NCBI GenBank assembly: GCA_050084985.1
Contig: JBITNC010000001.1
Location: 160,518,001-160,582,000 of the forward strand
DNA length: 64,000 bases
Source: Nageia nagi
Lineage: Eukaryota; Plantae; Pinophyta
Direction: 5' to 3'
Positions 361 to 60,659 of this stretch are shown piece after piece. Positions within the stretch are counted from its first letter, which is position 1, and every line of letters begins with the position of its first letter. A program made the position numbers and the translations under genes. The notes beneath the pieces were generated by a model. The model worked only from the letters and a program-made list of their open reading frames with translations. It had not been told where the DNA came from and ran no database searches.

Positions 361-1238
361 AAGCCTCATTTCTAAAGAAGATAATTATGAAGGAGATGAA
401 TATAAATATGATACTAGTGAAGTTTCATTTATAGATTTTAAATATTTAGAATTTAATGGTACTATAATTGATTCAAATTTTAATAAAGTGAAGAAAAATA
501 AGAGCCAAAAGGTGGAAATGGTTCCATTTCATTCACACTAGCTAGTTTATGGTTGCACATTCTTAGGGAGAGAAATTCCTAGTTTATATTATATGCTTCT
601 ATGTATGGTTGCTATTATTTTTATTGCTTACTTGAACTTGAGAATTGTACATGAATTTAGTGGGAGTATTTCAATTACTTATCTTCCTACCCTCAAACTT
701 AGTCTTCATAAGTTATCTTTCTTATTTTGTCCAAGAAATTGGTGTCTAGTATCTTATTGATTAAGATTGCTATGTACAACAATAACTTTCTATCTTACAA
801 TACCACTTCCTTACACATTTTATTTTTATCATATTACATCAAGGAGAAAATGTTATATTATTTGGGCTTCTTATTGTTGTCATTCATTTGTTTGAAGATT
901 ACATATTTTGGTGTATTATCAGATGATGAAGAAGAAAAGAGACTAATTTTATGCCAATATGTTGAATCTTGGTGTTTTATTTATTCTTGGTGGAGATTGC
1001 TATTAAGTTGTAGATATGCTTCAGTGTCCTTATAATACATCATTGATATTATTGAAAAAAATGGGGAGATAGGTATTGAATGGAGTGAGTTTTTACAACA
1101 ATGGTAAAGAGGGAGATTATTTACCATATGCTTATGCTTGTGTTGGTGTTCTCATTATTATCAAAGGAGTCTGCACATATGCCATAATATCAAAGGTGAT
1201 CAAGTGCAATTATGTTAAAGTCATACAATATATGAGAA

Positions 1239-1737
1239 TGAAGGATTTGAACAATAACATAAGAAACTCTAAAGTACCAAGATCTCATGAAAGCATAGAA
1301 TTCATATCTAAATAAATCTAATAAGATAATATCACAACATAACATAAGATGTAAGTGGTTCCTCCAATTAAGAGTACATCAACTAACTAGATCTCACTTC
1401 TCAACAAATATGAACTCTTACAAATCTCCTAATCTTCATCTCTTAAACACTATCCTATAGCATAACTTTATGCCACAAATTGATGTATGATACAAAGAGA
1501 GAGCCTTCTATTTATAGGCCAAAATCTCTCTTTGGATCACCCTTTTACCCAATGTATAAAATCATGACATGCACATCCTTTTACCGAAGGAGCATGCTCA
1601 TAACATGGAGTGTAGGACAAGTTACATTATCATATTCACTTAAATACTTAAGGTATCTAATGATACACTTAAGTATTAATAAATTTATAAAGCAAATTAA
1701 TACAAACCTTTATAATAATGTATTATACATTCCAACA
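1239..1737 (-). repeat. 3' LTR of Copia-1
   Basis: Starts TGAAGGATTTGAAC, ends TCCAACA, abuts the PPT; 124/142 identical to 7648-8146 over the first 142 nt. Confidence 0.95.
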
Positions 1738-2444
1738 CTCTCCCTTAATGTAATATTTGGATAGAGTGAATAAGAGAGAAGGAAGAGAGAAAATAAGAAA
1801 GTTATCCTCCAAATAGATACAATAAAGATGAGAAATTTTTACATATTTATAAATTAAGAAAGATCTAGTTTGAGGCTCACTACATTACTAAATACAATCA
1901 TTAATCACAACTGGTTTCAATGTACATGAAGTAGTCATCCAACTGGAAGTCATGAAGAATATCCAAGATCCTAAATATAAGAAATAAGTAACTTACAATC
2001 TCAAATGAACCTACAAGTCATAAGCAACTCAAATAATAAGATCAATTAGATGCAACATATTCATACCAACTAGGATATATGAATAACTCAAATACCATCA
2101 TGAATTGATCAATGGTGCACTATAAGTCATCACGAAGATGACAAGCCAAAACTCATAATCCCCTGCTATATATAAAATATGTGTTGATTATCACTACAAA
2201 ATAGAGCATGCACATATGAATAACTAAATAGTGCTAAAAGACACATAAGAGTTCCTTATACATGGAGAATTGAATAGTACTAGATTGGCCAATCTTTTTG
2301 TTTTAAAAATTTGTACAATAAGTTTCTCATATAGAATGAACTTACCATAAATGTGTACAACAAAATCAACACTATATATCATAAAATCTTTCTAGGGGTG
2401 AAGTTGTCATTGTAAACATGAATTCAATATAAGAATTTAAACTT

Positions 2445-5400: not shown

Positions 5401-6392
5401 AGAATGGGACATGGAGTAGAGCACTATAATAAAATTGGCATGAATATTCTTTTTTATTTTAAAGTTCCTTACATTACTATTTTTCTTTTTCTATATTTTC
5501 TTTTTGTAGTAATCAACTTTTTTATGACCTTAGATGCTATAATAGTTAAAATTACCATCAAAATTTTTTTTAGGATGTGGATTGTTTGCTTTGCCTTTTA
5601 CATCTCTTTGCTTGAATTGGTTATTATTTCTATTATTCTTATTATTGTTGTTATTCTTATTGTTGCTAATGTTACCATTGTTCATACTATTGTTGTAGCC
5701 ATTGCCTCTTTTTTAAATCTTTTGGAAAAAGAAATAGAAGATTTCTTTTGATGGTTGAACTTCTTCTTGAGAGAAATTTTAGTTGCTCCAAGAGCAATGT
5801 TATTATCTTTTAGAGAAGAAATCAATCTTTTTGTTAAGGGTTTTCTCATACTTCAAAAGGAGCCTATAAAGGTTATCAAATGAGAATACTTCTTTATCAT
5901 CAAGCCTTATTTCCATAACTACCATAAAGTTTTCAAACTTTGAAGAATGATGAAGACCATGAACTCATCATTGATCCAATTACACCCATAATCAACAAGT
6001 TAGGTCCTTAGGTCAATGATTTTGTTCAAGTAGATGGCAACATTTTCATATTTCCCTTGATGAGATTGAAACAACTTTTGGAGAATGGTAAAATTTCATG
6101 AAAACTTTGAACCAAGGTAGATTTGCTTAAATTTATCCTAAGCTTTCTTTATCGAGGTTGAAGAGAAAATTATTAAGAGCACATCATCTAATACTGTATA
6201 GAAGATCATGGAGTTTACTAACTCATTCTTTGTGTTCTAAGCCTCTAGTGCCTTCTCATTTATAGGAGGTAAAAGGTTCTCATTCACTATTTACCAAAGA
6301 TTCCTTGCCTGCAACTTAGCTTTCATTCGAGGTTCTCAAATCCAAAAGTTGGAATCATTAAGAATTTATTTGGGTAAAAATGAGTCTCTCAT
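2445..6392 (-). pseudogene. Copia-1 gag-pol with many stops and frameshifts
   Basis: Integrase HSNLIG..QTKSFGGASYILTFIDDFSKMTFGYLL (4631-4828); RT FEMNDLDLLHCYLGIQV (3271-3480); Asn-rich gag segment near 5620-5710. Confidence 0.9.
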
Positions 6393-7164
6393 TTGCTACA
6401 CAAGAATATGAAACAAAATAAGCATGTGGTTTAATAAACAACAATTTATGTTAACTTTTACATGTTACATTTAATTAACTAAGACATGCTTGATTTGACT
6501 TAAAAAAAATTCCTAAGCATTAACTTAAAAACCTTAAATCCTAAGCATAAGCATGCATCATTTCTACACTTATATCATTTCATAAGTATGCATTATTTTA
6601 TTACTTTGCATAAGTTAAATTTGTGAAAAAATGCATTAAGATTAAAAAATTAAGTAGGAATGCATCAAATAATCCATCATGCATAAGTATATTTGATAAC
6701 TATGTGTAATTACTTAGAATCTATGCATTTTTTTTAGTATCTAAAAAAGTAAGTAAAGATTATAAAATTTCCCCCTTCTTTTACTTAAAAAAGATCCCCA
6801 AAGATAGAATACTAACTTAGCATAGCAATTTATCTTTAAATTCCTTCTAAGTATATATCTATTAGAAAATAATATCCCCCTTGTTTACTTTAAAAAAATT
6901 TGAGTATCCCCTTTAATCAATAAAAGCTTAGTAAAATTTGATCATATGAAAGGTTCAAATATCTTAAAAGTACTTTTACCAAAATAAATTGTAATATATA
7001 GTTAAGCAAATAGAAGGAAATTTGTAAATATTCTTACTAATTTTGCCATTTTAAAAATTTAATTTAATTTTTATTTTTATTAAGTAGTCAAAAAATAAGC
7101 CATCATTGCAAAAAGTAAATGAAGGAAGAAACTTACTCCATTTATGCATTTAATATAATAGAGA

Positions 7165-7362
7165 CAAACCCCTCAATTCTCATGTTGGTGCATTATTCTC
7201 CACCTATTTTGTTCTCCTTTATTCTAACCTACTAGTGAATTAATCTCTATCAGTTCTCTTAGTTGACAAAAATTAGTTACAAATTAGGGAGATGATGGTG
7301 TTGACTGGCCAAACTCCTCAATTCTCCTATTGGTGCATTGTTCTCCACCTATTTTATTCTCC
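7165..7362. repeat. 53-bp direct repeat pair in the Copia-1 5' UTR (7165-7217, 7310-7362)
   Basis: CAAAC(C/T)CCTCAATTCTC..TTGGTGCATT(A/G)TTCTCCACCTATTTT(G/A)TTCTCC occurs twice. Confidence 0.9.
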
Positions 7363-7647
7363 CCTAGTAGATGACATTCTTCCTCTTGGTGTGTTCACCC
7401 CCTTTAGTGTGTTATTCAACTTTGGTAGCCATCGCAACCTTGAGTCCACTCTTGCCCCCTACCAACTACCTTATATGGCCACTCTTACATTTGCCTTACC
7501 TTCTAGTTCTCCCTGCCTCCACCTTGCCTCTTGATTCTTCTTGCCTTTGACCCCACTTTCCTCTGCTCATAGCACAACTACATCATTGGGGTGGCTCACA
7601 CATCTATAGCTCATGAAGAGGAGCCTCCAAGGTGATCTGATACCAAT

Positions 7648-8146
7648 TCAAGGATTTGAACAATAACATAAGCAACTCTAAACTACTAATATCTCATGAA
7701 AGCACACAATTAACATCTAAATAACTCTAAGAATACAATCTCACAACATAACACAAGATGTAAGTGGTTCCTCCAACTAGAAGTACATCCACTAACTAAA
7801 TCTCACTTCTTAACAAATATGAACTCTTACAAATCTTCTAATCTTCATCTTCTAAACACTATCTTATAGCATAACTTTACTTCACAAATTGGTTTATGAT
7901 CAAAAGAGGGAGCCTTCTATTTATAGACCAAAATCTCTCTTTGAATCACCCTTTTACCCAATGTACAAAAGCATGACATGCACATCCTTTTACCCAAGGG
8001 CCATGCTCCTGACATGAAGTGTAGGACAAGTTACATTATCATATTCACTTAAATACTTAAGGTATCTAATGATACCCTTAAGTATTAGTAAATTTACAAA
8101 GAGGATTAATACAAACCTTTACAATAATGCATTATACATTCTGATA
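7648..8146 (-). repeat. 5' LTR of Copia-1
   Basis: Homologous to 1239-1737 with mutated termini (TC..TA); PBS adjacent; followed by TSD GAGAA. Confidence 0.95.
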
Positions 8147-8424
8147 GAGAAGTGTACCAAAATCTAAAGACTTTAGTCTAGGCATGTACAAAGTTTGCCA
8201 AGTGCCTAAGAGATGTATAACATATTGTGTTGGAGTTTTGAAAGTATTAACAAGCATTTAGATTCTATCGAAGTTGATGAAATTTTGTTTACTCCACTCT
8301 ATCAAATTTTAATCAGAATTAAACAATATTAAAATGGTTAGAGTATAATGTATTCTATTTTTCCACCATTCTAGTGAAGTTCATCTACTCCAATTCTACT
8401 GAATTTTTGTTAGAATCAAACATT

Positions 8425-8525
8425 ATGATGCATGAAGGTGAAGACTATCGGATGATGATGCAATGAAGGTGAAGATCGATCGAATGATGATACAATGAAG
8501 GTAAATACCATTGTATGATGATGTA
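8425..8525. repeat. ~31-bp tandem repeat x3 within old LTR-element remnant
   Basis: ATGATGCAATGAAGGTGAAGA-like units; also present in copy B near 56750-56845. Confidence 0.75.
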
Positions 8526-11500
8526 CAGAAATGGAGTTTTATTGAAAGGCTTAATGCTTATGTAAAAAAGGAATGTGAATCTGAAACTTTGAGAAACCTT
8601 ATGATGCTAGCATGTTTTTAAGTGCAAATGTTTTTATTACATTGTATTTTTTTTAGTATGGAGAAATATGATAGTGTTAGCAATAACTGAAGTGCAAATT
8701 TCCCTCGTATAATGGTGTTTCTTGGGTGTAGAGAAATGTGGTGAAATCAATAATATTTAGAGTGTGAATTTCCCCTCTAACATTATGTTTCCAAGGTGCG
8801 AATGAGCTTAATGATGTTAGCACTCTACAAAGTCAAGATTCTTCAGCAGACATTGCAAAATGACATGAGTTTGATGTAGATTACCTTAGGGAGAATATGA
8901 AAGAGTTAATGCGGCCATATAAGGGCTTATGTGAAAAAGTAGATGCTTATGCAGAGATGAAATATATTATGCAAAAGCAGATGCATAGTTACCAATTTGT
9001 CATCTGAAGAGCCCATACTTTGTGAGAAGAGATGTTATAAATATGATGAAGGAAGAAGCTGGAGGTATGATGTCAATTGTGAACAAAGGTGTTATAAAGA
9101 GATGCAATTGCTTATGCAAAAACTTTAACCCTTATGCAGTAAAGTAAAGACTTATGAGATGCAAACAAAGCTTATGCAGACAAATGATGCCTTATGCATA
9201 GAAGTGAGGTCCTATACAGACATAGATAGTCATGTGTGGAGAGATTCTTGACAAACATGTACAATAAAATGAATTAGATGGATATCTTAGATTTTTATTG
9301 CAACTTATTTACTCTATTTATAAACATCATTTCTAGTTTTTAAACTTTTGTAGAAGATGTTAGACCTCAAAGTGGGTTTGTATGGTAACCTTTCATATTA
9401 ACATAATGCTAACTATTAATAGCTAGAGCATGTGTGCTTTGCATAGCCCTTTTAAATATTTGTTGTTATTTAATGTTTATTAATAATAGTGAACAAATAG
9501 TTTCAAGGAAGAATATTTGTTTGAATAATAAGCATTTACCCCATTTAAATTAATCCATAGGATTTATTTTTTATTATTATCAATTATTTGGAACAATCTT
9601 GTTTGGATTAGGGTAGTGGCAAATATGGAATTCAAAATCTTAAATTGTGTGATTTTTAATATGTTTATACTTGGTAAACCTCAAATCTAAATATTTCATT
9701 AGTGCATATGAGGCATTATTAGTGTTATGTGAGTGTGGTTATTAGTAATTTTATGTCTAGGAGAGTGCCAAAAGGTTTATCATCTACTTAAACATTACTA
9801 CTATTTATTTAAAGAAAAGGGTAACTTTCTTTTTCTAATATCCATTGCTTCTATGCTATGAGAGTGTTCTAATAAGAAAAGTAGGATTTACCTAGAATAT
9901 CATGATTTACTTGGAATAATTGAGACTACTATGTCTCATAATAATGTAATTAGATAAAATATGCTAGAGGAAACTATGGATTCACATCCAACTTTATACA
10001 TTTAATGACCATCTCATCTCATATTGTAACAAATTTGTTATTTTTATTATTATTATTATTACTATTTTATACTATAGGAATCGATTTTGACTTACATTTA
10101 TAATCTTCTCTTCATGAATTTGAATCCTAATCCTTCCTACCACTATAACCTCTAATTGCACAAGATAAACCTTTTAACATAACTAATAATGTTGGTACTA
10201 TAAGGCTTAGCAATGTGGTTGTGGCTTGGCAAGTAGTTGAGGATATTTCACATATTGCAATAATGTATTTTTTATATTGTAGGGGAGTTTTCATATACTT
10301 CAAGCTGATTTCACTTGCTAGTATGCATTTTATGCCTAGGAACTTATCTTGATAATGAAAAAGTTAAATACTTAGCATAGATAAGAAAAATCTTGTTGGT
10401 TGGTACTATGAGAAAATTTCAGGACTTTAGAGACTAACCATTTATAAGTTTTTCACCATCAACTATCGAACCTGCTTTGGAATTATGAATAATGAATAAT
10501 AGATTAAGATTACAGACCATGGTATCATATGATGTGATATCTTGACATAAAAGGAAATTTATGATAAGTAGATACTATTATAAGTTACCCATTTAGTTTG
10601 ATGTGATATTTAGGAATCATAACAAAGAGGCACTCAGGTTTAAAGTGAAAGTAATTAACACTTGTGAATGCATATATACAATTCACCTAATTAGCATGGA
10701 GCATATTATTTGTGGAAATGGTAAATAAAGCCATGAGATAAATTTCCCAAATTCATTTATGATTTCATGTAGTCATTGATATTTGATATTATAATTTTTT
10801 TCATGTGATATAAAGAAAGTTGTGAATCTTTTTCAATTATCTTATTAAATGTATAAAATTCATGACCATGCATAAGCTTCAAAAAAATATTTGTGCTATT
10901 AGTTACATGCTCTCATTCCATTGATCTCATAGGCACAAATTAGATTGTGTTATTTATAAAGTTACAAATCATCATTTGTCTATGGATATGAAGAATGTTC
11001 TTGGATATTTAGAGGGAAAATTATGGGTGTATTAAATAACAATTAGTTTGATGATTGATGGAAGTCATCGATGGTTATGAAGAAACCTTGCCTAATTATA
11101 AACACTACCTACAAATACCTTAATAGTCAAGATGATTAAAATTCTTTTTTCTAAAAAATAACCTAAAAATGTAAGAGATAAATAACATATTATGAGCACC
11201 TTACTATACCTAGAATTATAAATCTATTTCTAGCCATCTAAATGTGTAAAATTTTTAATTCGATCTTCAATGTTAATTTCAAAAAGTTCGAAGCTAAAAA
11301 ATAGTCAGATGCTACTCTGTTGCAATTTCTAAACTATGACAAGACCATCCCAAAATCTTTGGTCCAAATATGATTTTGCATGTCTACCATGTGTTGTTGG
11401 TTTTGTATTTAGGTATGTTACAAAGATGTTATAAACCATAAAGGTCAAGGATTAGTCTTCAATACTACCCTTTGCAGACCATTCTATCTACTGCTTTGTT

Positions 11501-12292
11501 GTTAGTAATCTCTTAAATTAGACAGGCACTTATAGTTCCTTTATTTGTAAGACTTAATATGATTCATACATTCCTTCTAATAGTGCGACAACAATGGAGC
11601 ATACTAAATGCTCCAAAATCAAACTTAGATTTAAATGTTGTCTTGTAACACAATTCCATTTATCTAACTAAAATTAGTTTTTTGTACAAAATTATTATGG
11701 TTCGAACCAATACCATAAAAAATCTTAATTTTTTTGGTTCCAGTAGAGAGTTATGACCAAATTACGAATAATATTTTAAGCCATTAAAATGGATTGTTTT
11801 AGAATGTCATTCTTATGGTAGAGTCTTATTTGCCTACCTTTCACATTTTTGTAATGGTAGATGGTTAAATACAAGACTAAATACTCCCCTAAGTTGTTAT
11901 AAATAGTTCATTACAAAAAAAATAGAAAATAAAAAGAAGAAAAAGAATAAGAATAATAAGAATTTTAATAATACAAATAAGAATAATAAAAAATAATAAT
12001 AAATGCAACAATAAAAATAAATAAAAATTATACGATATATGTAACAAAATTTTCCCTCGTTAACTTTCCACACATCTTGCTTATTGCACAAGGTTCCAAT
12101 TGGTAGTATATATCTGTCTATATATATATATGAATGGGCATTTAATGGCCAATTACCTTTTTGCCAAAAATCTTACATGAGTATCGTCTTATATCAAAAG
12201 CTCTATGGTCCTTATTCAGATTAAGAAATAGGCTAGCTATTATTTGGAAAATGGAACGGATGTTATATTAAAAGTAATAAAACGCCATTAGG

Positions 12293-12497
12293 AAATTGTA
12301 TTGGAATTCAAACACTGCTTCGATGATTCGAATGAATGGCCATTCGTTATTCAGAAGCGTTTGTCCTCTTAATGTGGCTGATTTATATATCAAATAGCAA
12401 GTTGTAGTAGATTCAAAATTTTGGTTTGATGATTCCAATGAATGGTTATTCTTTTATTCATAAGCTTTCGTCCTCTTCATGGGATAATTTCTATACT
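12293..12497. repeat. ~107-bp tandem duplication upstream of hairpin A
   Basis: ATTCAAA..GATGATTC(G/C)AATGAATGG..TTATTCA.AAGC.TT.GTCCTCTT.ATG occurs twice (~12293-12390, ~12400-12497). Confidence 0.8.
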
Positions 12498-12775
12498 GAG
12501 ATATGTTTAATATCAATGTTTGAATTTTGTTGAGTTTTGATTCTACTCCAAATAAAGTTATTAATGTGCGACAAAGCGAATAAGTTCGGTAAGCCGGCCT
12601 GGATCATTTGCTAAGGAAGCGTACATAAAAATACGAGTTCGCACAGAACAGCCGGTTGTCTTTTGTGAGGCACAAGCAGACGCGAGCTGACCATCTGTGA
12701 AATTGAAATATAGTCCTTATTACCAATGGGTTGAATATCTCCATTCCTCGTTAGCGAAGGCAACCACAGAAGTTC

Positions 12776-12877
12776 AGATTGTTTTCCGCCATTCTTGCTC
12801 TACAAAAGGCTTCCTCATCAATGAATGGGTGTTTGTGGCGAGGAAGTTTTGTAGGGCAATAATGGCGAAGAACGTCT
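12776..12877 (+). ncRNA. Candidate pre-miRNA-like stem-loop, copy A
   Basis: 5' arm GTTTTCCGCCATTCTTGCTCTACAAAAGGCTTCCTC (12781-12816) pairs with 3' arm GAGGAAGTTTTGTAGGGCAATAATGGCGAAGAAC (12840-12873) with 2 mismatches, a 2-nt bulge and G:U pairs that form only on the + strand; 23-nt loop; lies in a CpG-retaining island. The fold is seen in sequence; expression is not shown. Confidence 0.6.
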
Positions 12878-14999
12878 CCAAAAACACCAACTATATTTAC
12901 ATGCTTCCACTTCCTTCTCCTGTAGCGTCAATCCAACAATTGCATGGTAAGAGGGCATTGAGTATATTTGGATTGGTTTTCAGTTGAGTTTCTTGCTTCG
13001 CCTTTAAATTTTATTTTACACAACTGCTTGCTCTGCGGACTAGATCCCTTTCTGAACGCAAGGGCAAAGATATTTTATTTTACTTTTTTTTTTTTTTCTA
13101 TCGATGGAATTTTAGTGTCCTGAACGGTTCACAACATCTAAATCGTGTATAGAAATTGGGTAAAGCGATAAAAAAGTAGTCTACCAAACGAACAGTAGCA
13201 TCGATTACCTAGATCAAACTTCCTTGCAAATTACCTAGCACCCTTTGGCCCGTCCAATGTTGAGGAGTTTATTCTGCAATTCCAGCTTCTCCTTTGTGAA
13301 AACTATTCTACATATTCAATATTGTGCATCGTTAACATCACTGCTCTTTTGAGATGGATGCCATTAACGCTTCTATTGACAAAAATAAGCTTGCCAAATC
13401 CTGATGGTATTCTAAAATTTATGGATTTCTATGGGTTTAGACTCTATAGAGAGAGAATGATTGGAAATGTTTTTGGTTATGGTTGTCTGTATTTAGTAGG
13501 TGGCTTTTGTGTTGAAGTTATTCAAAAGTTGTATTTAATCGAAGTTATCTAATTGTTGCATTTAGTGGACATCTTCTATTTAATAGAATTTTACAATGGT
13601 CACATTAAAGGATTTTGAGTTCGACTTTCTACATTAGAAATAGTTTGCACTTATATAAATTTAATGCTAAGCATCATTTCATTAATTGTGTTTGAATGAT
13701 ATACAGGATAAAGAGTTTATATAATATATATTATTTTAAGTCATACTTATTTCATTTCTATTATTTATTTAAAAGTATTTAAATATTAGCATAATATTGT
13801 ATGTTGGATTTCAAAGGTATGTTAAGTTGATTTTGCTAAGAGTAATCTGAATAACATGCATAATATGTATATACAAAACTTCTTGTATCTTTATATTATA
13901 TGTTCTATGACATTTAATCTTGATTTTTTTTTTAAAGTTGAGTTGATTTGTTTTATGGTGTGTTGAGAGTTTCACAAACCAAAGTGATTGCATCCTTGTC
14001 TCTAGTAATCATTTCAAATTATTTTTCTTTAAAAACTAAGACCTTATTCTTGAGTTTCAAATACTACTTTGATACTATGAAACAAAAAAATTCTTAACAA
14101 ATAATTAAAATATTAGTTTTGAATAAGAATTATTTTGATGTTTTTTAATAATTTATTTAAAATTAATAGTACATTGTATAAATATTAATAGAAGCCTCGA
14201 TAATAAAGAACATCAGGAAGTTCATTTTATCGAGTAAATCTCTACAAATATGTAAAACTACTTTTAAATTATTAAAAATAGTACATTTAATTTGTATTTT
14301 AACTATTTAAATAATATTTTCTCATATTCATTACGGACTTTGATGTGAAATATTTATTAATATTTTACTTTGTAATGGAATTAGCATATATGAAGTGATG
14401 AGACTTATATAGAATATGGATGATAACTTAATCAAATAAAAAGTCATATTTAATCCTTAATATTTAACTAGTGGAAAACATAATTATGATTTATGATTAA
14501 ACTCTATTGAGTCCAAACATCATATAATATGTAATACTAGATTATTTTTACCATTAATATCATGGCAAAGAAGATCTTAATAATAAAGTTAAGTAATATA
14601 AGTTTTACAGTGAACATAAATTAGGAAGGGCTAATATTTACATAATATATTAAGTTAATAATATTATAGTTGAATTAATAAAGAAGAATTCCAACCAACA
14701 TATGACAATAGTAATAATAGATTGAAATGAAATAAAAGTTTAATTTGATAAAAATGAGTTATATAAGTTTGAAAAAGAAAATAGTCATGTAGAAAGTTAA
14801 TATATTTTTATCAACATTGAATTTTGAAAAGCAAATTCCAAATGAAATAATCTTGTTAAAGGATGATAATATTTTTATAATGATTAAGCTTTTATTAAAG
14901 TATGAAATATTTGATCATACATAAAAAATAGGTGGACACATCACACATCAAGCATTAATGCACTATCCAATCAAAATAAAATTCCCATAAATAATACAA

Positions 15000-17900
15000 G
15001 AACAAAACAAAATACCTTACAATTTCGTGGGGTTAGCTACTATTCAATCAATAATATTACGAAGTAAATGAATGTAACCCCATAAAATTTTAGTAAATGA
15101 GAAAAGTGCTAGCATGCATATTTGCATGCTCATCATTAATGGAAATTGAGGGATTTGTAGATTTCTCATGATTTTTCTACACATTAGAAGAAACAATGGC
15201 CCACCTAGTGTTAGGGATGTTGTTGTAAATATCATATGAGTTTGGCCTTAAGTGGCTTGGTGTGGGGTATATAATAATTAATTGGGATATACAGAGTTCA
15301 TCTATTTAGGACCACAATCTCATCATTAATTATTGGAGAATCACAATCATGCCTTCCATTATCACCATCATTATTAGAACCTCTCCATCCATCATTTAAG
15401 GAGAGGAATCTATCAAATCACCCATACGGTTTCTTATAAGGAGAAGCTTTGAAAAAATTCACAACCAAGAGAAAAACAAGTAGGAGATGGATATGGTTTC
15501 CAAGTGTTATTATATCACTAGTATTGTGGTCAAGTTGGTATATGATCTCACCCCTACAAGGGAGGGAAATGACTTTCCTCAAGCGAAATCACTCTTAAGT
15601 TTTAGAAACTAGCAAAACATGACTCAGAGAGCATAAATTATTTTCCCAATAATCAATGAGCTCCTACACATGGCTAACTTTTAGCGTCATCTTAATCTTT
15701 AATCTAAAATCAAATATCATGAAAAATGATAAGCTTATCAATTGAAGAGAATTCTATAGAAGAAATATTCTCTACAAAAATAATAGCATTCTAGTATTTT
15801 CAAAGATGAAATATATTTTTAATTTTTAATACATTCCATAATTCTTCAAGCCCTTCAGAGAAATCTAGAGGCTATTCTATGTGATTGGGGAGCCAACTTA
15901 AAGGTTCTTTTAATCTTTGGAATAAGACTTGAAGAGATGAATTATCATTTTTTCTTACCCATAGAAGGGATAGGTAGGTTTATCAACTCCTACATGTATA
16001 AATCTATGGCCAACTAGGAGACCTTAAAAAATTAGGCTCCAAAGAAAAGAAAAATATTTCCTTGCGTTCAATGAAATTATCCCATATCAGCTTGATTCTA
16101 GAGTTCCATCTCTCTTTGGAAGAGAATAGATTCCATTCCTTATTACTCTTCGACACCATGTGTATGTTAGGAGAGAGCCAAAAGTAATCATGTTTACCTT
16201 TATAGATAAAAAGTGAAATATGTTTAAACCTCTTCCATTCTATCCACCATGTATATTTAGCTAAATGGATACGATTAGGCCATTAAGAAGGAAGGAGTAC
16301 AATTGATCACCAAATCATTTGTATCATTATCCTCATGTTGAAGCACATAGGTAATTATTTTATTAAAAAATCTTTTCATCATAAATCCATTGAGTTATTC
16401 CAAGAAAAAAATTCTAAAATTTAATAACTAGAGATTAACACACATTAAGAGAAGATAAGGAATCTTCATTACAGTATCCATCACTTTTTTAAAGGAGCCA
16501 AGGCTTAATAGCCTCCCATTATTTCCAAATGCTTTTACAAATAAATGAATTAAAGATATTAATTGGTGGTTGGGCTACTATGATGGAAGGCAAATCTAAC
16601 CCTCTCCAACATTTTTTATCGAAAGTAATACCTTTAAAGATACAATGTTGAATTAATATATTTTGAGATTATGAACCCTTTAAGTCTTTGATGATACACT
16701 TAGATCTCAATCAAAAGCCCTGAATGTTAATAGTCTAAAAGATTAATGCCTCATGAAACTATGGGAAGGCAAAAAAATTCCAAGGAAACTTTATGTAAAT
16801 ATTTTTTCTTTGATGTTAGTGCAAAGAAAGTATTTGAGAAGTTTTTCTAACTTTTTATAGTAGGCTTGAGATAGAACTTAGTACCTGACTAGTAGTATAT
16901 AAGAGTGTAAGCAAGGATCTTTGAGAAAATTTGAAATTTACTAGCTAGGGATAATTTCTTAGAGATCTAATAGGATACTTTTTTCCTATATTCTAGATAA
17001 CATACTCCCATAATTCGATAGGGATACTTTGAAATATAGTAGTATACATAAGAATATAAATATTTCATCTATTATAATTTAATGCTAAAGGTAAGAGGCT
17101 ATACAATCAGGTACATTTATAGGAGATTATCCATAACAAGATATCTTAGTTCATTGAATACTTAACCTTGATGCCTTGTAAAGAGTATCAAGGAAAGTAG
17201 ATGCTTGACACATTGAATTTGTTTCTTCCTTTAGAGGAAGGAATGAGTCATCCATAAAATACCCATTGATTAATTATCCATTATTTCTTGGAAGCGAAAT
17301 TATATGAACTAGCCCCTACAAAGCTTTTCTTGTTAACAATAGCTATATGCTTTAATTTCCAACACATATAAAAAAGGGGCAAGAGAAAAACCTTTTCTAA
17401 ATATCTAAAGAGATAAATTATGACTATCTAAATACCATCAAGAGTAAGTGTTGATAACACATGGTTGAAGAGAATTTCAATCGAGGAAATAAATGCAATA
17501 CCAAATCTAATTTCCTTAATCATGTAAAGAATGGAATTCCATTCAATCTTTTCATAAGATTTTTTAAAGTCAATTTTTATGGAAAGTAAATGTTGCTAAG
17601 TAGCTCAAGCCCATTCCACACCTTCCTACATAACAATCAAATTATAAAGAATGTATTTATTTTGAATGAAATCCATTTATTTAGGATGAAGAATATAGGG
17701 AGAGAAAAAGCCTTAGCATTAATGCTAAAGGTTTTACTATGATCTTGTAGCTTACAATGAATAAAGTAATAATACTATAGCTAGCAAGAAATTTAGGATC
17801 TCCTAACTTGTATATGAACTTGATATTTTCTTTAGTTATTATGTGATCCTACAAGACTTTGACAAGAACTTCATGATGAATGAGAAGAGGTTCTGGATCA

Positions 17901-19228
17901 ACTACATCCCAAATCTCTTTGCAGAATTCAAATATAAAATCTTTTCATGTACCATATAAGAAAGAGTCATTTTTAGATCCTCGAGGGAGGGAAGGTAGCC
18001 ATATGCTACCTTTTAAGAGGCATATAACTTCTCTAATGTAAATTTACAATATTTAAAGAAAGTATTGTATCTATCCATGGTAAGTTCTCATACTATAAAA
18101 ACTTGTTAATAATATTTGAAAAATATAAGGGAAATATTGAAAGGCTATATGACTCTTACACTTGCATCCATGATGGGTTTAAATTGTACAACTCATTTTT
18201 GGGTTGAAGATATTGGAAGAACTTTTTAGAGACTTTATCTTCAATTTGAAGGCAATGAATATGGATTATCATCTATGCTAATTTAGCTTCACATGTCTTA
18301 ATATTTCTTAAGTTATCTCTACCTATTTCTACTTACTACTAAAGAGTGATGCTCATTAGATTGGCTTTAAGTCAAACTAAAGTTTGGATAATCTCTTCTA
18401 TAAGAGTATGAATAGAACTCTCACAAATTTCAGCAAGCTTAATCCTTATGACTTTAAACACTAAGATGGATCTAAATATTACATTGTTCCATCAATCAAT
18501 CCAACTAATACTCCCTAAATAACTTGAAACAAGATACTAAACTCTACAAATAGGAGCTACATTAGTTAGATGTTATGAAAATGAGATATTAAAGTAAAAT
18601 GTAGAGTGAAACACCTTGGGGGAAGGTGCAATATTAAAAATAATGGTCATATGATCTAAAATTATGTTACTAAGAGATACAATAATAAGAGACCAAGAAA
18701 TACTAATAATGTGGAAGGAAAATCTTGAATGGTATATAAGCATATCATTTTCTAGTCACTTTAAAACTATATCCTCCTTAGCTTGAAAATTAGATAAGGT
18801 AAACTAGATGAAATATATAAAGTCATTGGAAGTGTTATAAGCATTAGGGTCTACTAGCCCATGATTATTAAAAGAAAAAAAAAATGTATATTGCTTGCCT
18901 ATACAACAACGAATTAGGAAGTGGCCCACTTTATATTTCAATTTTTTAATCATATTGAAGTTGTGATAAAAACCCAAATAGATTAGGGAGGTGATAATGA
19001 TTGATATTTCTATAGGAAAAACTTATCAGGGTCATTTTTGGAAGCATAAATGTTAACAATCCTAAATATCTTTTTATCAATATTAGAAAATGTACATACC
19101 ACTTTGTTAGATGGATCCACACTCCAAGAGATTAGAATTCAATGTCATTTAGGTGTAATAAGGATGATAGTGCCACCTCTTTAATGAAAATTATTAGTAG
19201 AATAGAAAAAAAATTAGACCAAGGAAAA
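15000..19228 (-). mobile_element. Degenerate L1-type LINE ORF2 (endonuclease + RT), copy A
   Basis: Minus-strand motifs IVNIYAS (~19040-19060, endonuclease), IKIDFKKSY (~17553-17580), a decayed RQGCPLAPFLY-like motif (~17365-17400) and FMDDS (~17245-17260, FADD-like). Ends approximate. Confidence 0.85.
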
Positions 19229-20270
19229 GGGTCAATTCAAGAAGTTAGGTCCACTTTAAGGCCAAAAAGTGAAAGTGTTTTCCTTGATTTTCAAATTTTG
19301 ACACAAGTAGTTTAAAAATTTGAAGCACTTAGACATGGAATTATGAAAAATATCACTGCGATGAAAATGTAGTGCTAAGAGTCTAGTTTTTAAATATGTA
19401 ATTTATTTCATTACCAAAATGATAGAAATTAAAGTTTTATATGTGGATGAACAAAAATCACATTTTATAATATATTATTTTAGGACCATACCATGCATGT
19501 GTTTGGCAAGCATAATTTAACCTAAATAAAAGTATTTTTTAAAATCCTTTTTGGCATAGATACCTAAGGCATTGATATTTTTCCATAATTTTTTCATGAA
19601 TGCTTTTTTATTATTTTCATATAAGTCATGTTTATTATTTCGAAAAGTGCTTGTATCTAGAATGCATAATTTGATCTAAACTTATTCATTTTTAAATATT
19701 TTTATCTTCAAATATAATAGTTTGAAGCTTGTCCCGATATAATGTTTTTCAAAACTCCCAAAAAATAAAAAAAAATTATTAAGAAAATAAGATACCCTAA
19801 TATTTCAAGTATATGGACTAGTTTCATCAAAAATTAACTAAAAAACATCAAATCAAATCTAGTTGAAAAGTAATTTTCATATTTCAAATTTGTACTCTTT
19901 CATTTGTAATGGGTTTCAGTTTCATAAAAAAATTCCATCAAAATCACCATCTAAAGTATGCTCAAAGTTGCAATTTTTTAGTGAAATCAACTATGAATAA
20001 GCCCGTGTAGGTCCAAGGCTAATGGTTGGCTCACTAAGCATTTCCCAAGCCCCAAACTTAGGATGTTGGAGTGAGAAATGAATTTGAATATATTAGGATC
20101 CCAATATATCAAGATTGTAATATAAGTTACATATATCAAGATCTTGATATATTGAGATCTCAATTTTTTTACACTCATTGAAAAACCATTTTCCATTATA
20201 AAATATATAGAGATTCTAATTTGTTTTTACCTATTACAAACAAAAAAATTGCAGACACCTAAATTGAGTA
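19229..20270 (+). mobile_element. ~1-kb non-coding dispersed repeat, probable non-autonomous DNA transposon (copy 1)
   Basis: Homologous in reverse orientation to 52897-53840 (GGTCCACT.TAAGGCCAAAAAGTG.AAGT; CACTTAGACATGGAAT; CATACCATGCAT); internal inverted repeats at 20097-20159. Confidence 0.75.

Positions 20271-22809: not shown

Positions 22810-22869
<60 letters not shown>
22810..22869. repeat. (TA)30 microsatellite
   Basis: Perfect dinucleotide run, flanked by a ~70-bp direct repeat (22731-22805, 22878-22943). Confidence 0.98.
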
Positions 22870-45425: not shown

Positions 45426-45916
45426 TCAACATAAATCAATACTGCTACCCATTGAGGCTACCGTCATAGAGATTGTATCAGAAGTAGTTTGATACTTCCT
45501 CTTATAATATCCTAGCTTCGTCTCTGTTTCTTGAAGTTTAACTAACAAATCTGTGACTATTTGTCGCTCGACCTCATATCGTTGCTCTGCTTTATCTGCT
45601 CTCTGCATCTCTCGTTCCCACATTCCCCACCAATCTCTTTGAGGAGGATTCCTCTCCCTCTCTCTCATTGTTTCGTGTAAGTGCTCAATTTTATTCCGTA
45701 GCATGTTCACCTCCTGTGAGCACTCAAGAATGCGAGAGTTTAGGTCTTCTCGCATTCGCTTCTCCTCTTGGTGCGGTAAGCTAAGCTCAACCATGACAAT
45801 AAACACATCACTCTATCGCCCACTTCTCTTCGCTACATGTTTGCGTACAACCTCTCCACCTTCAAGAGCAAGATTAATGGTAACCTGTATAAGAGATCTC
45901 CATTCCTCTACACTAC
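45426..45916 (-). pseudogene. Last exon of the TIR locus: coiled-coil region
   Basis: A GT-AG intron (45917-46012) joins WYEGDPG to SVEEWRSLIQ in frame; one internal TAG (45813-45815); then E/R/K/Q-rich helical sequence REDLNSRILECSQEVNMLRNKIEHL..ETKLGYYKRKYQ to the stop at 45426. Confidence 0.7.
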
Positions 45917-46012: not shown

Positions 46013-46795
46013 CTGGATCACCCTCATACCATGTCATGCCCTGGTGTACTGACTTGATTTGCATGGACTCCAAAATGGAGTCATCACCTACATAACCCAC
46101 CTTATTGCCACTGAAAAAGTTCACACATACTCCAATATCCAAAATCCAGTTGGAGGAAGTCAAAGAACGGCTTTGGTTTTGATTTGGAGATGCTTCCTTG
46201 TGAATGGGGAACTCCACATAGATTCGGTTGAGGAGGAAGCAAACGGATTTCACAACTTTATTTCAGAAATCAACTTCATTTTCGTCTTTGCCAAAATATA
46301 AACCGTTAATGGAACGAACTTCTTTTAGAGCATCTTGCCATTTACTTCTTGTGTCATTGCTTTCCTCTAACTTTTGCCATTCGGAACTGTCCTTTGTGAT
46401 GTTAGAGAGTTCTTTTGGGCTAATCATGAAGAAGACCGGCAATATTTTAACGTGGGCGTTTTTCCCTGAATTTATGGCGCTAATGAAAGCGGACAGTTCA
46501 AGCATTGGCCATTTTGAACTAATAAATTCTTTGGATAGAACCACGACCGCTATTTTGCATGTTTGAGCGGCTTTAAATATAAAAGGAGGAAATTGCTGGG
46601 CAGGTGGCAAGCTTTTGTGATCCTCGTCAAAAAAGCATGTAATATGTTGTGTCGTCAGGTGTCTGTAAAGCTGCCGAACAAAGTTTTTCTGTTTGCCACT
46701 GTGACTAAGAAATACATCCTTATTCTCCCCGTCAACTTTTCCCCATTGAACGTCACTGCCGACAAGTATAATAGCGGACTAATCAGCCGCATAAT
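46013..46795 (-). pseudogene. TIR-domain exon (TIR at 46266-46718), probably of a pseudogene or a TIR-only gene
   Basis: DVFLSHSGKQKNFVRQLYRHLTTQHITCFFDEDHKSLPPAQQFPPFIFKAAQTCKIAVVVLSKEFISSKWPMLELSAF..KILPVFF..KWQDALKEV: a canonical plant TIR retaining the conserved Glu; in-frame TAG at 46779-46781 and TGA at 46263-46265; upstream GT-AG intron 46796-46870. Confidence 0.9.
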
Positions 46796-46870
46796 CTACA
46801 AGGCAATAGTGGACTATTAACAACAAAATTATAGATAAGGGAAGAAAAATTTAAATTGAGTCCATATTAC

Positions 46871-47950
46871 CAATGTTTTGAAGATCTTAATTCCTCCCTA
46901 GCTGATTGAATAGCCTTTGGAGGGCTCCCGACCACACAAGTTCAGATTGTTTTCCGCCATGATTACTCTACAAAATGCTTCCGCGGCAAGCAGTACCCAT
47001 AATAACAATAGTTGGCATGACCAGCTCATTTTGACCATAAATCGTTCTGGTGCTCGTTTGTTAGAGTGTTGTCTTATCCTTCTAACCAATTTTAGTGCAC
47101 GATCTACACGGTATGAAACATTTAAATCACTATAATCCCAATGGTGGAAATGTAAACATTAAAATAAGGCTACCACTTTTCAAATGCCAGAAGAAGTAAA
47201 TCTAGTTAGCAAACCAAGCATTCTTAAAAGCTTTAATGCAAAATAAAGATTTACTGAAGAGGGAAACACACCTGAAAACCCATCCACTGTTGATAGTTTC
47301 CTTCAAGACCTCATTCTTGTCATGGGATAAGACCATAATTATCACGAGGAAACATCATGATACCGCACTAATTCATTGATATCAGACGGAATCCTGATCA
47401 TGCAACTCCATTATCTCGGTATGGATAAAGAGTGTATACGTTGAGTTCATCGTGCGGATAGCCTAAGTGCTGTATGCATTTGAACTTGCACGGCAGTTAT
47501 ATGTCCGTGATGCCCAATGCATATGTCCAATGGATCTCCGTAATAGCCAATGTATGGTTTGGCCTTTTTAGCCCACCTTCATTCTTCTATCGAAGCTCAA
47601 ATGCTTCTGCTTTCGTTGAAGGTGCGGGTTTCTATCCCCACCACCCACAGATGATGATATTGAGGTTGTTCAATCAAATATGAAACTCGGTGGTCATCCT
47701 ATGTTCCTTCCACGGTCTTAAATTTTCTAGAGATTGCTACATTGTTCATGTCAACCATTAGAATATTCCTGCTACTGCTTTTCTATTGCACAACGAATAT
47801 AGCAGATATAAGACGTTCAAGAGACACATCATCATAGAAGATAAGGATGTTCAACGGTTAAACCAACGTGGATTTGTGAAAAGCAATGTTCGATGCTAAG
47901 CATTTTCTATCACGACTAAAACTGCATCATAGAAACTCGCCATGAATAGA
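46871..47950 (-). pseudogene. Degenerate upstream exons of the TIR locus (possibly plant mobile domain-like)
   Basis: CpG-retaining, coding-like composition; splice donors at 46870 (TTG|GTAATA) and 47271 (CAG|GTGTGT); interrupted translations LSAR*TQRIHSLSIP and LVWSGALQRLFNQL weakly recall PMD motifs. Confidence 0.4.
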
Positions 47951-58000: not shown

Positions 58001-58431
58001 AATCTAAATATTTCATTGGTACATCTAAGGCATTATTAATGTTATGTGAGTGTGGTTATTAGTAATTTTATATCTAGAGAGTGCCAAAAGGCTTATCATC
58101 TACTTAAACATTACTACTATTCATGTGGATAATTTCTATAGTGAGATGTGTTTAATATAAATTTTTGAAGTTTGTTGAGTTTTGATTCACTCCAATAAGT
58201 ATTAACCCCACAAAGCGAATAAGTTCAGTAAACCGGCCTGGATCATTTGCTAAGGAAGCGTACATAACAATATGAGTTCTTTAAGCTCAGAATTGATACG
58301 CACAGAAAGCCGGTTGTCTTTTTTGAGGCACAAGCAACGCGAGCTGACCATCTGTGAAATTGAAATATAGTCCATATTACCACAGGTTGAATATCTCCAT
58401 TCCTCATTAGCGAAGGTCACCACAGAAGTTC

Positions 58432-58533
58432 AGATTGTTTTCCGCCATCCTTGCTCTACAAAAGGCTTCCTCACCAATGAATGGGTGTTTGTAGCGAGGA
58501 CGTTTTGTAGGGTAATAATGGCGGAGAACGTTT
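58432..58533 (+). ncRNA. Candidate pre-miRNA-like stem-loop, copy B
   Basis: 5' arm GTTTTCCGCCATCCTTGCTCTACAAAAGGCTTCCTC (58437-58472) pairs with GAGGACGTTTTGTAGGGTAATAATGGCGGAGAAC (58496-58529); several G:U pairs on the + strand; 23-nt loop. Confidence 0.6.
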
Positions 58534-60659
58534 CCAAAAACACCAACTATATTTACATGCTTCCACTTCCTTCTCCTGTAGCGTCAATCCAACAATTGCA
58601 TTGTAAGAGGGCATTGAGTATATTTGGATTGGTTTTCAGTTGAGTTTCCTGCTTCGCCTTTAAATTTTATTTTACACAACTGCTTCCTCTGCGGACTAGA
58701 TCCCTTTCTGAACGCAATGGCAAAGATTTTTTATTTTACCTTTTACTTTTTAATCGATGGGATTTTAGTGTCTTGAATGTTTCACACCGTCTGGATCGTG
58801 TATAGAAATTGGTAAAGCGATAAAAAAGTAGTCTACCAAACGAACAGTAGGATCGATTACCTAGATCAAACTTCCTTGCAAATTAGCCAGCACAATTTGG
58901 CCCGGCCAATTTTGAGGAGTTTGGTCTGCAATTCGGACTTCTCCTTTATGAAAACTATTGGGCATATTCATTATTTGTACATCGCTAACATTTGCTTTGA
59001 ATTTTCTCCTTGTATTTCTCATCACTGCTCTTTCGAGATGGATGTCAATCTTCTATTGAGAAAAAGAAGCGCGCCAAATCCTGATGGTATTAAAAAAATT
59101 ATGGAATTGTATGGGTTTAGAGAGAGAATGCTTCGAAATGTTTTTGGTTATGGTTTTCTGTATTTATTAAGTGGCTTTTCTGTTGAAGTTATTCAAAAGT
59201 TGTATTTTATCAAAGTTATCTAATTGTTGCATTTAGTGGACATCCTCTAACGAATATAATGTTTTAATGCTGACATTAAAGGATTTTAACTTTAACTTCT
59301 ATATTAGAAATAGTTTCTAATTCTTTTAATTTATGTTGATAATAGATTGCACTTAAGTATTATGCTAAGCATCTTTCAATTAATTGTGTTTTAATGCGAC
59401 ATATGAATAAAAGTTCATGTTATATATTTTATTTTAAATCTTACTTATTTCATTTCTATTATTTATCTAAAAGTAGTTAAACTTTAACATAATGTTCTAT
59501 GTTGGATCTCAAAGCATGCTAACTTGGTTTTGTAGATAAAGTAGTAATCTAAATAACAATGCACAACATGTATATATAAAAGTTACTCTGTCTTTATATT
59601 CACATGTCTATGGATTTAATCTTGATTTTTTTCAAGTTGAGTTGTTTGTTTTACGGGGTGTTGGGAGTTTCACAAACCAAAGTGATTTCCTCCTTGTCTT
59701 TATTAACCATTTTAAATTATTTTCCTTTAAATACTAAGACCTTCTTTTTGAATCTCAAATACTACTTTGATATTATGAAACAAAAAATTTCTTAACCAAT
59801 AACTAAAATATTAACTTTAAATAATAATTATTTTGATATTTTTTAATAATTTATTCAAAATTAACAGTAAACAATAATAGAAACCTCTATAATAAAGAAC
59901 ACATGAAGTTCATTTTATAAGTGAATCTCTACAAAAATGTAAAACTACTTTTAAATTTTTAAAAATAATGTATTTAATTTGCATTTTTAACTATTTAAAT
60001 ACTATTTTCTTACATTCAATAGGGACTATGTTATGAAATATTTATTAATATTTTATTTTGTAATGTAATTAGCATAGATGAAGTGATAAACCTTATATAT
60101 AATATAGATGATAACTTAATCAAATAAAAATTCATATTTAATCCCTAATAGTTAAATAGTAGAAAACATGATTATGATTTATATTTAAACTCTATTAAGT
60201 CCAAACATCATTATTATATCTAACACTAGATTATTTTTATCATTAATATCATGGTAGAGAAGATCTTAATAATTAAGTTATCTAATATAAGTTTCATGAT
60301 GAACATGATATTTACATAATACATTAAGTCAATAATATTATAGTTGAATTACTAAATAATTATTCCAACAACATATGGCAATAGTAATAATAAATTGAAA
60401 TGAAATAAAAATTCAATATAATAAAAAACAAGTTATACAAGTTTGACAAGTTAATATATTTTTGTTAACATTGAATTTTGAAAAGCAAATTCCAAAAGAA
60501 ATAATCTTGTTAAAGGATGCTAATATTTGTTTTAATGATTAAGCTTTGTATTAAAGTATAAAAGAATTGATCATACAAAAAATATAGGTGGACACAACAC
60601 ACATCAAGTGCTAATTCACTATCCAATAAAAAAAAAAATCATAAATAATGCAATAGCCA

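What the first reader, a model, noticed from the sequence alone, without database searches (positions are those of the whole stretch)
12712..12877. MIRNA-like hairpin built from an inverted duplication of an exon of the neighbouring TIR locus
Seen: 12776-12877 folds into a ~38-bp stem with a 23-nt loop, and its G:U pairs form only on the + strand. The 5' arm plus upstream flank matches the TIR locus: 12763-12814 vs 46931-46982 is 47/52 identical, and 12712-12755 vs 46859-46902 is 36/44 and includes that exon's splice donor. The 3' arm is a second, inverted copy of the same segment. The TIR locus is on the minus strand, so a + strand 5'-arm small RNA would be antisense to its transcript. Established: homology extending beyond the duplex is the signature of the inverted-gene-duplication route of MIRNA birth (described for Arabidopsis MIR161/MIR163), and immune-gene families are frequent miRNA targets. 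Inference: a lineage-specific small-RNA gene physically linked to its source/target locus.
Basis: partly seen in the sequence, partly recalled or inferred. Interest (0 to 1): 0.88.

Follow-up and report, generated by a model that had tools for sequence, protein, structure and literature searches.

The report
TIR-gene-derived hairpin, present in two copies
A small stretch of plant DNA copied head-to-head from the front end of a neighbouring immune (TIR) gene can fold into a microRNA-like hairpin and has survived in two old duplicate copies, but no RNA data could be obtained, so whether it makes a regulatory small RNA is still open.

Summary
12776-12877 folds into a 44-pair hairpin: + strand -48.8 kcal/mol, z -5.2; - strand -41.8. 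The stated matches to the TIR locus are exact (47/52 and 36/44, against a window background of at most 29/52). The 3' arm is a second, inverted copy.

New findings:
- A second copy (58432-58533) lies in a large segmental duplication and also folds (-47.8).
- The right flank (12969-13194) is a colinear copy of the TIR locus's upstream region. It points away from the hairpin.
- This roughly 550-bp patchwork of TIR-gene front-end fragments is the best-conserved 400-bp window of the 8.4-kb duplication (95% against a median of 80%).
- Conservation is not centred on the hairpin. Stem substitutions look neutral: 2 wobble-preserving, 3 pair-breaking, no double compensatory change.
- A 23-nt block (12770-12792) is perfectly antisense to the source's ATG region and is identical in both copies.
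- No Rfam family matches.
- The run search listed only one doubtful run, holding almost none of the sampled words, and no reads laid on the locus. Expression is untested.

Verdict: origin by inverted duplication is well supported. MIRNA function is plausible (about 0.4) but unproven. An inert relic homogenised by gene conversion is nearly as likely. The scan had already noted the second copy and the source site on this same window.

The parts
12776..12877 (+). Hairpin A: 5' arm about 12776-12816, apical region 12817-12839, 3' arm about 12840-12877
   Evidence: MFE -48.2 to -48.8 on +, 36 WC + 8 GU pairs, MFEI 1.07, z -5.2. Inverted repeat I1.
12763..12821 (-). Minus-oriented copy of the TIR-locus segment 46931-46989. 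It carries the 5' arm and includes the ATG region.
   Evidence: 86% over 59 nt, E 6e-15; 47/52; alignment A1.
12700..12755 (-). Continuation of that copy: the end of the exon-1-like segment, the GT donor-like site, and the start of what follows it. It has a 21-bp deletion relative to the source.
   Evidence: 80% over 56 nt, E 1e-10; 36/44.
12847..12873 (+). Plus-oriented second copy of the same segment (the 3' arm). It is more diverged from the source than the 5' arm.
   Evidence: 81% over 27 nt; in copy B 75% over 44 nt, E 5e-5.
12770..12792 (+). 23-nt block perfectly complementary to the sense strand of the TIR locus at 46938-46960 (ATG plus 20 nt). It is identical in hairpins A and B.
   Evidence: target score 0 for all 21/22-mers inside it, in both copies.
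12878..12968 (+). Spacer of unknown origin just 3' of the hairpin. It is the most conserved piece between copies A and B (1 difference in 91).
12969..13194 (+). Colinear, diverged copy of the region just upstream of the TIR locus's exon-1-like segment (47286-47051, gene-sense). It is oriented rightward, away from the hairpin.
   Evidence: A 62%, B 68% over 170 nt; E 2e-14 and 3e-19; alignment A2.
12652..13222 (.). Conserved island between copies A and B. It coincides with the patchwork of TIR-gene 5' fragments.
   Evidence: 5.7% divergence vs 10-18% in the flanks; transitions and transversions both reduced; best 400-bp window of 142: 95.3% vs median 80.5%.
58432..58533 (+). Hairpin B, the paralogous second copy. 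It differs from A at 7 positions.
   Evidence: + strand -47.5 to -47.8, z -5.4; - strand -38.5, z -2.3; MFEI 1.03.
58357..58846 (.). Copy B of the whole TIR-derived patchwork, with the same order and orientation of pieces.
   Evidence: B rows.
46847..46992 (-). Source-like segment at the TIR locus. It lies downstream of a hydrophobic ORF segment, contains an ATG, and ends at a GT donor-like site near 46871. All three frames have stops.
47051..47286 (-). Region upstream of that segment at the TIR locus, homologous to the right flank of both hairpins.
46266..46778 (-). Intact TIR-domain exon of the neighbouring locus.
   Evidence: Pfam PF01582, 2.4e-11; 1.5e-68, 70% identity to P0001; 193 bits against a TIR HMM built here.
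45429..45812 (-). Downstream open frame of the same locus, rich in charged heptad-like sequence (putative coiled-coil exon).
Evidence: There is no Pfam family above threshold.

Best explanation
Shown: a short piece of the 5' end of a TIR-coiled-coil immune-type gene (the ATG region, up to a donor-like GT) was duplicated head-to-head. This created an imperfect palindrome of about 40 bp. The palindrome sits inside a patchwork of about 550 bp that also holds a copy of the founder gene's upstream region. The patchwork existed before a large segmental duplication and has been kept, unusually well, in both resulting copies.

Inferred: it is a young MIRNA-type or hairpin small-RNA locus of the 'inverted duplication of the target gene' kind. 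If the + strand is transcribed, the hairpin would be cut by a Dicer-like enzyme. Small RNAs from the lower half of the 5' arm (about 12770-12796) would pair almost perfectly with the start-codon region of transcripts of the founder family. They would then guide slicing or translational repression of the linked TIR-coiled-coil genes.

Not shown: transcription, dicing, small-RNA size and precision, and target cleavage.
For: - The hairpin is real and far better than chance in both copies. MFEI is 1.07 and 1.03.
- Every 21-nt register of the stem has at most 3 unpaired positions (structures).
- Both arms and the flank derive from the TIR locus.
- A 23-nt perfect antisense block is identical in both copies.
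- The + strand folds 7-10 kcal/mol better than the - strand in both copies.
- The island holding the hairpin is the best-conserved window of the whole duplication, with transversions reduced as well as transitions.
- The hairpin keeps its stability better than random substitution predicts. It is in the top 6.5-8% given 7 substitutions, and the top 0.3-1% given the flank rate.
- The antisense (5') arm changed at 1 of 39 positions, the 3' arm at 4 of 39.
- One stepwise A-U to G.U to G-C change at 12797:12857 can be read with the source as outgroup.
- The + strand ORF through the hairpin is not under protein-level constraint (pN/pS 0.76; no Pfam hit).
- The route is established for MIR161/MIR163 and for 16 Arabidopsis loci (PMC1790633), and for NLR-derived MIRNAs (PMC5026261).
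Against: - There are no expression data of any kind.
- Conservation is highest in the 91 nt after the hairpin and extends about 300 nt further. This is unlike typical plant pri-miRNAs, where the foldback is the conserved part.
- Among the A/B stem differences, 2 keep pairing (G-C/G.U) and 3 break a pair in one copy. Two of the four stem transitions are wobble-compatible on +, which is the neutral expectation. There is no double compensatory change.
- The stability test is only suggestive (p about 0.07).
- The founder-promoter-like fragment lies downstream of the hairpin and points away from it. No upstream promoter was identified.
- A small RNA from the upper stem (about 12792-12812) would, by my own position-by-position count on the same scale (not a tool output), score about 6 against the source in the window, which is too poor for slicing. 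So function depends on where the hairpin is cut.
- Many structurally acceptable hairpins in large plant genomes are never processed.
Confidence: 0.4

Rival explanations
1. Inert rearrangement scar. A foldback or palindromic junction arose while the tandem TIR-gene cluster was being shuffled. It was carried along by the segmental duplication. It looks conserved only because a short gene-conversion tract, or a locally low mutation rate, homogenised the two copies. It makes no functional RNA.
For: - The locus is a scrambled patchwork of founder-gene pieces in mixed orientation, which is typical of rearranging immune-gene clusters.
- Conservation covers 550 bp and peaks outside the hairpin.
- Stem substitutions look neutral.
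- No promoter was identified upstream.
- No RNA run holding the locus was listed.
- The source locus itself has stops in all frames of the matching segment, so the neighbourhood holds decaying copies.
Against: - The island's edges coincide with the edges of the TIR-derived patchwork. A randomly placed conversion tract would not be expected to do this.
- Transversions as well as transitions are reduced, so lack of methylation alone does not explain it.
- Both copies keep near-maximal stability.
Confidence: 0.38
2. The conserved island is the promoter and first exon of a + strand transcription unit derived from a TIR gene (a pseudogene or long non-coding RNA starting near 12930-13000). The palindrome is only upstream sequence of that unit: a cis element or a passenger.
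For: - The right flank is a colinear copy of the founder's upstream region, oriented rightward.
- The best-conserved stretch, 12878-12968, lies between the hairpin and that copy and contains a TATA-like motif near 12889-12898 (the motif reading is mine, from the sequence).
Against: - No TIR exon or other recognisable exon follows on the + strand (tblastn; HMM).
- The ORFs downstream have no Pfam hit.
- No transcript evidence exists.
- This reading does not explain why the hairpin's stability is retained.
Confidence: 0.15
3. A miniature inverted-repeat transposon (MITE) or another mobile element that happens to resemble the TIR locus.
For: It is a short imperfect palindrome present more than once in the window.
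Against: - The two copies lie in colinear flanks of one segmental duplication.
- The only other match in 64 kb is the single, non-palindromic source.
- The arms are gene-derived, and the similarity runs out of the palindrome on one side only.
- The bases flanking the stem differ, so there is no target-site duplication.
- There are no terminal repeats around the island.
Confidence: 0.03

Closest known systems
Arabidopsis MIR161 / MIR163 and the 16 gene-similar young MIRNA loci (Allen et al. 2004, cited in PMC1790633; Fahlgren et al. 2007, PMC1790633)
   Same: - The foldback arms are opposite-orientation copies of a protein-coding gene.
- Similarity extends beyond the putative small-RNA site.
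- A founder-gene upstream fragment is also present, as was proposed for MIR163.
   Different: - Here no small RNA has been observed.
- The founder fragment is the ATG and 5' end of the gene, not an internal conserved coding region.
- The promoter-like copy points away from the hairpin.
- The organism is probably a gymnosperm.
NLR-derived MIRNAs with extended similarity to their targets (MIR472, MIR825, MIR1885, MIR6025 and others; Zhang et al. 2016, PMC5026261)
   Same: - The hairpin was born from a duplicated immune-gene family and is linked to that family.
- Its expected role is to dampen expression of close paralogues.
   Different: - Those miRNAs target conserved motifs in NB-ARC or TIR coding sequence, and so hit many genes. 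Here the site is the poorly conserved N-terminal / start-codon region of TIR-coiled-coil genes that lack NB-ARC and LRR, so only close paralogues could be hit.
- There is no match to any Rfam miRNA family.
Young hairpin / inverted-repeat siRNA loci processed by DCL4, DCL2 or DCL3 ('proto-miRNAs'; described in PMC1790633 and PMC5026261)
   Same: It is a recently formed, still fairly well-paired inverted duplication of a gene fragment. It could give heterogeneous siRNAs rather than one precise miRNA.
   Different: The stem is short (about 40 bp) and already carries mismatches and G:U pairs. That is closer to a DCL1 substrate than to the long, perfect inverted repeats of that class.

Membership tests
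Plant MIRNA gene (current annotation criteria: foldback plus precise small-RNA duplex) | A single foldback under 300 nt, in which a 21-nt duplex has at most 5 mismatched positions, at most 3 of them in asymmetric bulges, with no secondary stems inside the duplex | tested here: met
   The stem is continuous, with 1-nt symmetric mismatches and one 2-nt bulge. Every 21-nt register has at most 3 unpaired positions. MFEI is 1.07 and 1.03.
Plant MIRNA gene (current annotation criteria: foldback plus precise small-RNA duplex) | Small-RNA reads showing a dominant 20-24-nt miRNA and its miRNA* with 2-nt 3' overhangs, processed precisely, in independent libraries | not testable with these tools
Small-RNA libraries do exist for Welwitschia (PMC8275611, methods). 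The paper's supplementary files held here (some truncated) contain no miRNA list or sequences.
Any described miRNA family | A match to a curated family model at its gathering score | tested here: not met
   The best hits score 26.3 bits (animal mir-253, threshold 72) and 23 bits (MIR6445, threshold 100). These are generic hairpin similarity only.
MIRNA born by inverted duplication of its target gene | Both arms similar to one protein-coding gene family, in opposite orientations | tested here: met
MIRNA born by inverted duplication of its target gene | Similarity to the founder gene extends beyond the small-RNA / duplex region | tested here: met
   On the 5' side the similarity runs to 12700, through the donor-like GT (36/44). 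In addition, the right flank copies the founder's upstream region.
MIRNA born by inverted duplication of its target gene | The small RNA produced is complementary to transcripts of the founder family and guides their cleavage | tested here: inconclusive
   In silico, 21/22-mers within 12770-12792 score 0 and those up to about 12796 score 2 or less against the source. Upper-stem registers score about 6 by my own count, not a tool output. Which register is produced is unknown. Cleavage cannot be tested here. The intact paralogues lie outside the window.
MITE | Many dispersed copies, terminal inverted repeats at the element ends, and a target-site duplication | tested here: not met
   There are only two copies in 64 kb, both inside one colinear duplication. 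There is no target-site duplication at the stem base. Genome-wide copy number could not be tested.

The most novel reading that the evidence does not exclude
A working, lineage-specific MIRNA gene in a gnetophyte that was born inside its own target cluster from the start-codon region of non-canonical TIR-coiled-coil genes. It has been kept under selection in two paralogous copies, together with a fragment of the founder's upstream region. It tunes TIR-only immune signalling genes rather than NLRs.
Probability: 0.2. Interest if true: 0.55.

Novelty: new member of a known kind. Interest (0 to 1): 0.36.

Why it matters
If it is active, this would be a clean gymnosperm example of MIRNA birth by inverted duplication, caught with both arms, the flank and a founder upstream fragment still recognisable. 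Two diverged copies would allow the early evolution of a foldback to be studied. It would also extend small-RNA control of immune genes to TIR-only (TIR-coiled-coil) genes.

If it is inactive, it is an ordinary by-product of rearrangement in an immune-gene cluster. In that case it is mainly a caution that a good fold plus gene homology does not make a MIRNA.

Tried and rejected
- Rfam at a permissive threshold: only sub-threshold generic hairpin hits.
- Run search, one allowed: a single doubtful run holding almost none of the sampled words (share 0.00). Laying it on 11500-15500 gave no contigs. This is no evidence either way.
The cDNA or genomic context of relatives could not be fetched, and the intact flanking paralogues could not be read.
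- The search for homologous proteins with the 115-aa and 171-aa TIR pieces: no protein from the same genome. The nearest relatives are Taxus and Cryptomeria proteins and an unnamed Logan contig.
- Metagenome scan for the 23-nt block: nothing.
- Welwitschia genome paper supplements: no miRNA list.
- Protein-coding reading of the + strand ORF through the hairpin (98 and 90 aa): rejected. pN/pS is 0.76 and there is no Pfam hit.
- The idea that the hairpin's minus-strand frame is a decayed TIR beta-A/alpha-A fragment: a BLASTX hint scored only 1.8 bits against a TIR HMM built here and was absent from the six-frame search. Not significant.
- MITE: rejected on copy number and anatomy.
- An inverted copy at the TIR locus itself: none.

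Full report
**1. The observation**

The sequence at 12776-12877 is an imperfect palindrome.
- In a 131-nt context the + strand folds at -48.8 kcal/mol (z -5.16; none of 200 dinucleotide shuffles as good). The - strand folds at -41.8 (z -4.0).
- The 102-nt hairpin alone has 36 Watson-Crick and 8 G:U pairs, and MFEI 1.07. It survives in a 351-nt fold.
The best unrelated 52-mer in the window reaches only 27-29/52. BLAST E-values are 6e-15 and 1e-10.
- A five-way alignment shows two things. The 5' arm and its left flank are a minus-oriented copy of the source that runs through a GT donor-like site, with a 21-bp deletion. The 3' arm is a shorter, plus-oriented and more diverged copy.
- The TIR locus is on the minus strand. 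The TIR-domain exon 46266-46778 is intact (Pfam TIR 2.4e-11; 70% identity and E 1.5e-68 to its nearest relative).

**2.

(a) There is a second hairpin at 58432-58533.
- It folds at -47.8 on + (z -5.4) and -38.5 on - (z -2.3), with MFEI 1.03.
- It lies in a large segmental duplication, roughly 200-18236 against 55475-63971, with insertions.

(b) The right flank of each hairpin is also derived from the TIR gene.
- On the + strand, 12969-12999 and 13025-13194 are colinear with 47286-47256 and 47220-47051 on the gene-sense strand of the TIR locus. That is the region just upstream of the source segment (62-68% identity, E 2e-14 and 3e-19).
- The hairpin is therefore part of a patchwork of about 550 bp. 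In order, it holds: antisense exon-1-like piece, sense exon-1-like piece, a 91-nt spacer of unknown origin, and a sense copy of the founder's upstream region.
- That upstream copy points rightward, away from the hairpin.
- The TIR locus itself has no inverted copy.

(c) The source segment has stop codons in all three frames.
- In one frame a hydrophobic stretch runs straight into the ATG-containing piece.
- The frame that would splice in phase to the TIR exon has no start codon.
- So either the locus at 46 kb is a decaying copy, or its model is more complex than assumed. 'Exon' is an inference.
- Earlier notes of this scan report intact TIR-coiled-coil genes 9.5 kb before and 3.4 kb after the window (s1-859561, s1-859144). 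I could not read them.

**3. Organism**

The TIR exon's closest named relatives are Taxus chinensis and Cryptomeria japonica proteins. The window's GC is about 29%. That matches the unusually low 29.07% reported for Welwitschia (PMC8275611). A gnetophyte, probably Welwitschia, is an inference and was not shown.

**4. Is there constraint?**

- Copies A and B differ by 14-18% to the right of the island and 10% to the left, but by only 5.7% in 12673-13222. Both transitions (3.5%) and transversions (2.2% against 6-8%) are reduced.
- Of 142 sliding 400-bp windows over all 8.4 kb of aligned duplicate, 12652-13051 is the best, at 95.3%. The median is 80.5% and the best window elsewhere is 90%.
- The island's edges match those of the TIR-derived patchwork.
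- Within the island the hairpin is not special. It has 7 differences in 102 nt, while the 91-nt spacer after it has 1.
- By arm: 5' arm 1 of 39, 3' arm 4 of 39, apical region 2 of 24.
- Of the five stem differences, two are G-C/G.U and three break a pair in one copy. None is a double compensatory change. Two of the four stem transitions are wobble-compatible on the + strand, which is exactly the neutral expectation.
- With the source as outgroup, three older shared transitions all gave G.U on the + strand, and one pair went A-U to G.U to G-C in copy A. Counting all seven stem transitions, 5 of 7 are compatible with the + strand. By my own binomial calculation (no tool run) that is one-sided p of about 0.23.
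- A simulation that places the observed 6 transitions and 1 transversion at random gives -39.5 +/- 5.8 kcal/mol. The observed -47.5 and -48.2 fall in the top 6.5-8%. At the flank's rate (15 changes) they fall in the top 0.3-1%.
- The + strand ORF through the hairpin shows pN/pS 0.76 and has no family match. The conservation is therefore not protein-coding.
- Net reading: something keeps the whole patchwork similar in the two copies, either selection or a local conversion tract. The evidence that pairing itself is selected is only suggestive.

**5. Target logic**

- The block 12770-12792 is perfectly antisense to 46938-46960 (ATG plus 20 nt) and is identical in A and B. 21/22-mers within it score 0, and those up to about 12796 score 2 or less on the usual plant scale.
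- Registers higher in the stem would, by my own position-by-position count on the same scale (not a tool output), score about 6 against this source.
- Whether the locus could regulate the family therefore depends on where a Dicer-like enzyme cuts. That is unknown.
- It also depends on the sequences of the intact paralogues, which are outside the window.

**6. Expression**

No contig of that run lay on 11500-15500.
- A metagenome scan for the 23-nt block found nothing.
- The Welwitschia paper made small-RNA libraries but lists no miRNA sequences in the files held.
- There is thus no evidence for or against transcription or dicing.

**7. Comparison with what is known**

- Anatomy and inferred origin fit the inverted-duplication route of MIRNA birth (MIR161/MIR163; 16 Arabidopsis loci in PMC1790633) and its use by immune-gene families (PMC5026261).
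- Those papers also note that a new locus must lie near a working promoter. They note too that such loci range from precise miRNAs to heterogeneous siRNA hairpins, and to nothing at all.
- No Rfam family matches.
- It is not a MITE. There are two copies in one colinear duplication, no target-site duplication, and the arms are gene-derived.

**8. Verdict**

- The origin story is well supported.
- The functional claim is untested. I put it at about 0.4 for a small-RNA-producing hairpin, and about 0.2 for a precise miRNA that regulates the family.
- An inert scar homogenised by conversion follows at about 0.38. A + strand TIR-derived transcription unit in which the palindrome is a passenger follows at about 0.15.
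- If real, it is a new member of a known kind.

Noticed in passing
window 200-18236 vs 55475-63971: A large direct segmental duplication at 77-88% identity, broken by insertions. It carries both hairpins. With TIR-coiled-coil genes reported on either side of the window, the region looks like a tandemly expanding immune-gene cluster.
   Followed up: partly
window 1241-1732 and 7650-8141: Two 492-bp direct repeats at 90% identity bracket about 6.4 kb that is absent from the other duplicate. The bracketed stretch contains retrotransposon-like ORFs (for example 4634-4909). This looks like an LTR retrotransposon inserted after the duplication.
   Followed up: no
window 46847-47060 (-): The exon-1-like segment of the TIR locus has stops in all three frames. 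A hydrophobic stretch and an ATG share one frame, and the splice-compatible frame lacks a start. This suggests a frameshifted or decaying copy, although the TIR exon itself is intact.
   Followed up: partly
window 12777-12851 (-) and 58433-58507 (-): The minus-strand translation across the hairpin resembles the start of the TIR domain (an HS..K.FVEQ..R pattern). It scores only 1.8 bits against a TIR HMM built here, which is not significant. If real, the 'exon 1' segment would itself be an old partial copy of the TIR exon.
   Followed up: partly
window 41526-44946: A run of about 1.1-1.4-kb tandem repeats at 70-79% identity with strong C-over-G skew, just downstream of the TIR locus.
   Followed up: no
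window 19245-20043 vs 53031-53823: An inverted pair of about 800-bp repeats at 71% identity, lying between the duplicated blocks.
   Followed up: no
window about 54.9-55.0 kb: A run of N (seen as X in the 54682-55257 minus-strand frame). This is an assembly gap next to the start of the second duplicate.
   Followed up: no
window 22810-22869: A dinucleotide microsatellite, visible as a ladder of self-hits in BLAST.
   Followed up: no
window 12289-12389 and 12395-12495: A tandem duplication of about 106 bp at 75% identity, just left of the point where the A/B homology resumes (12473).
   Followed up: no
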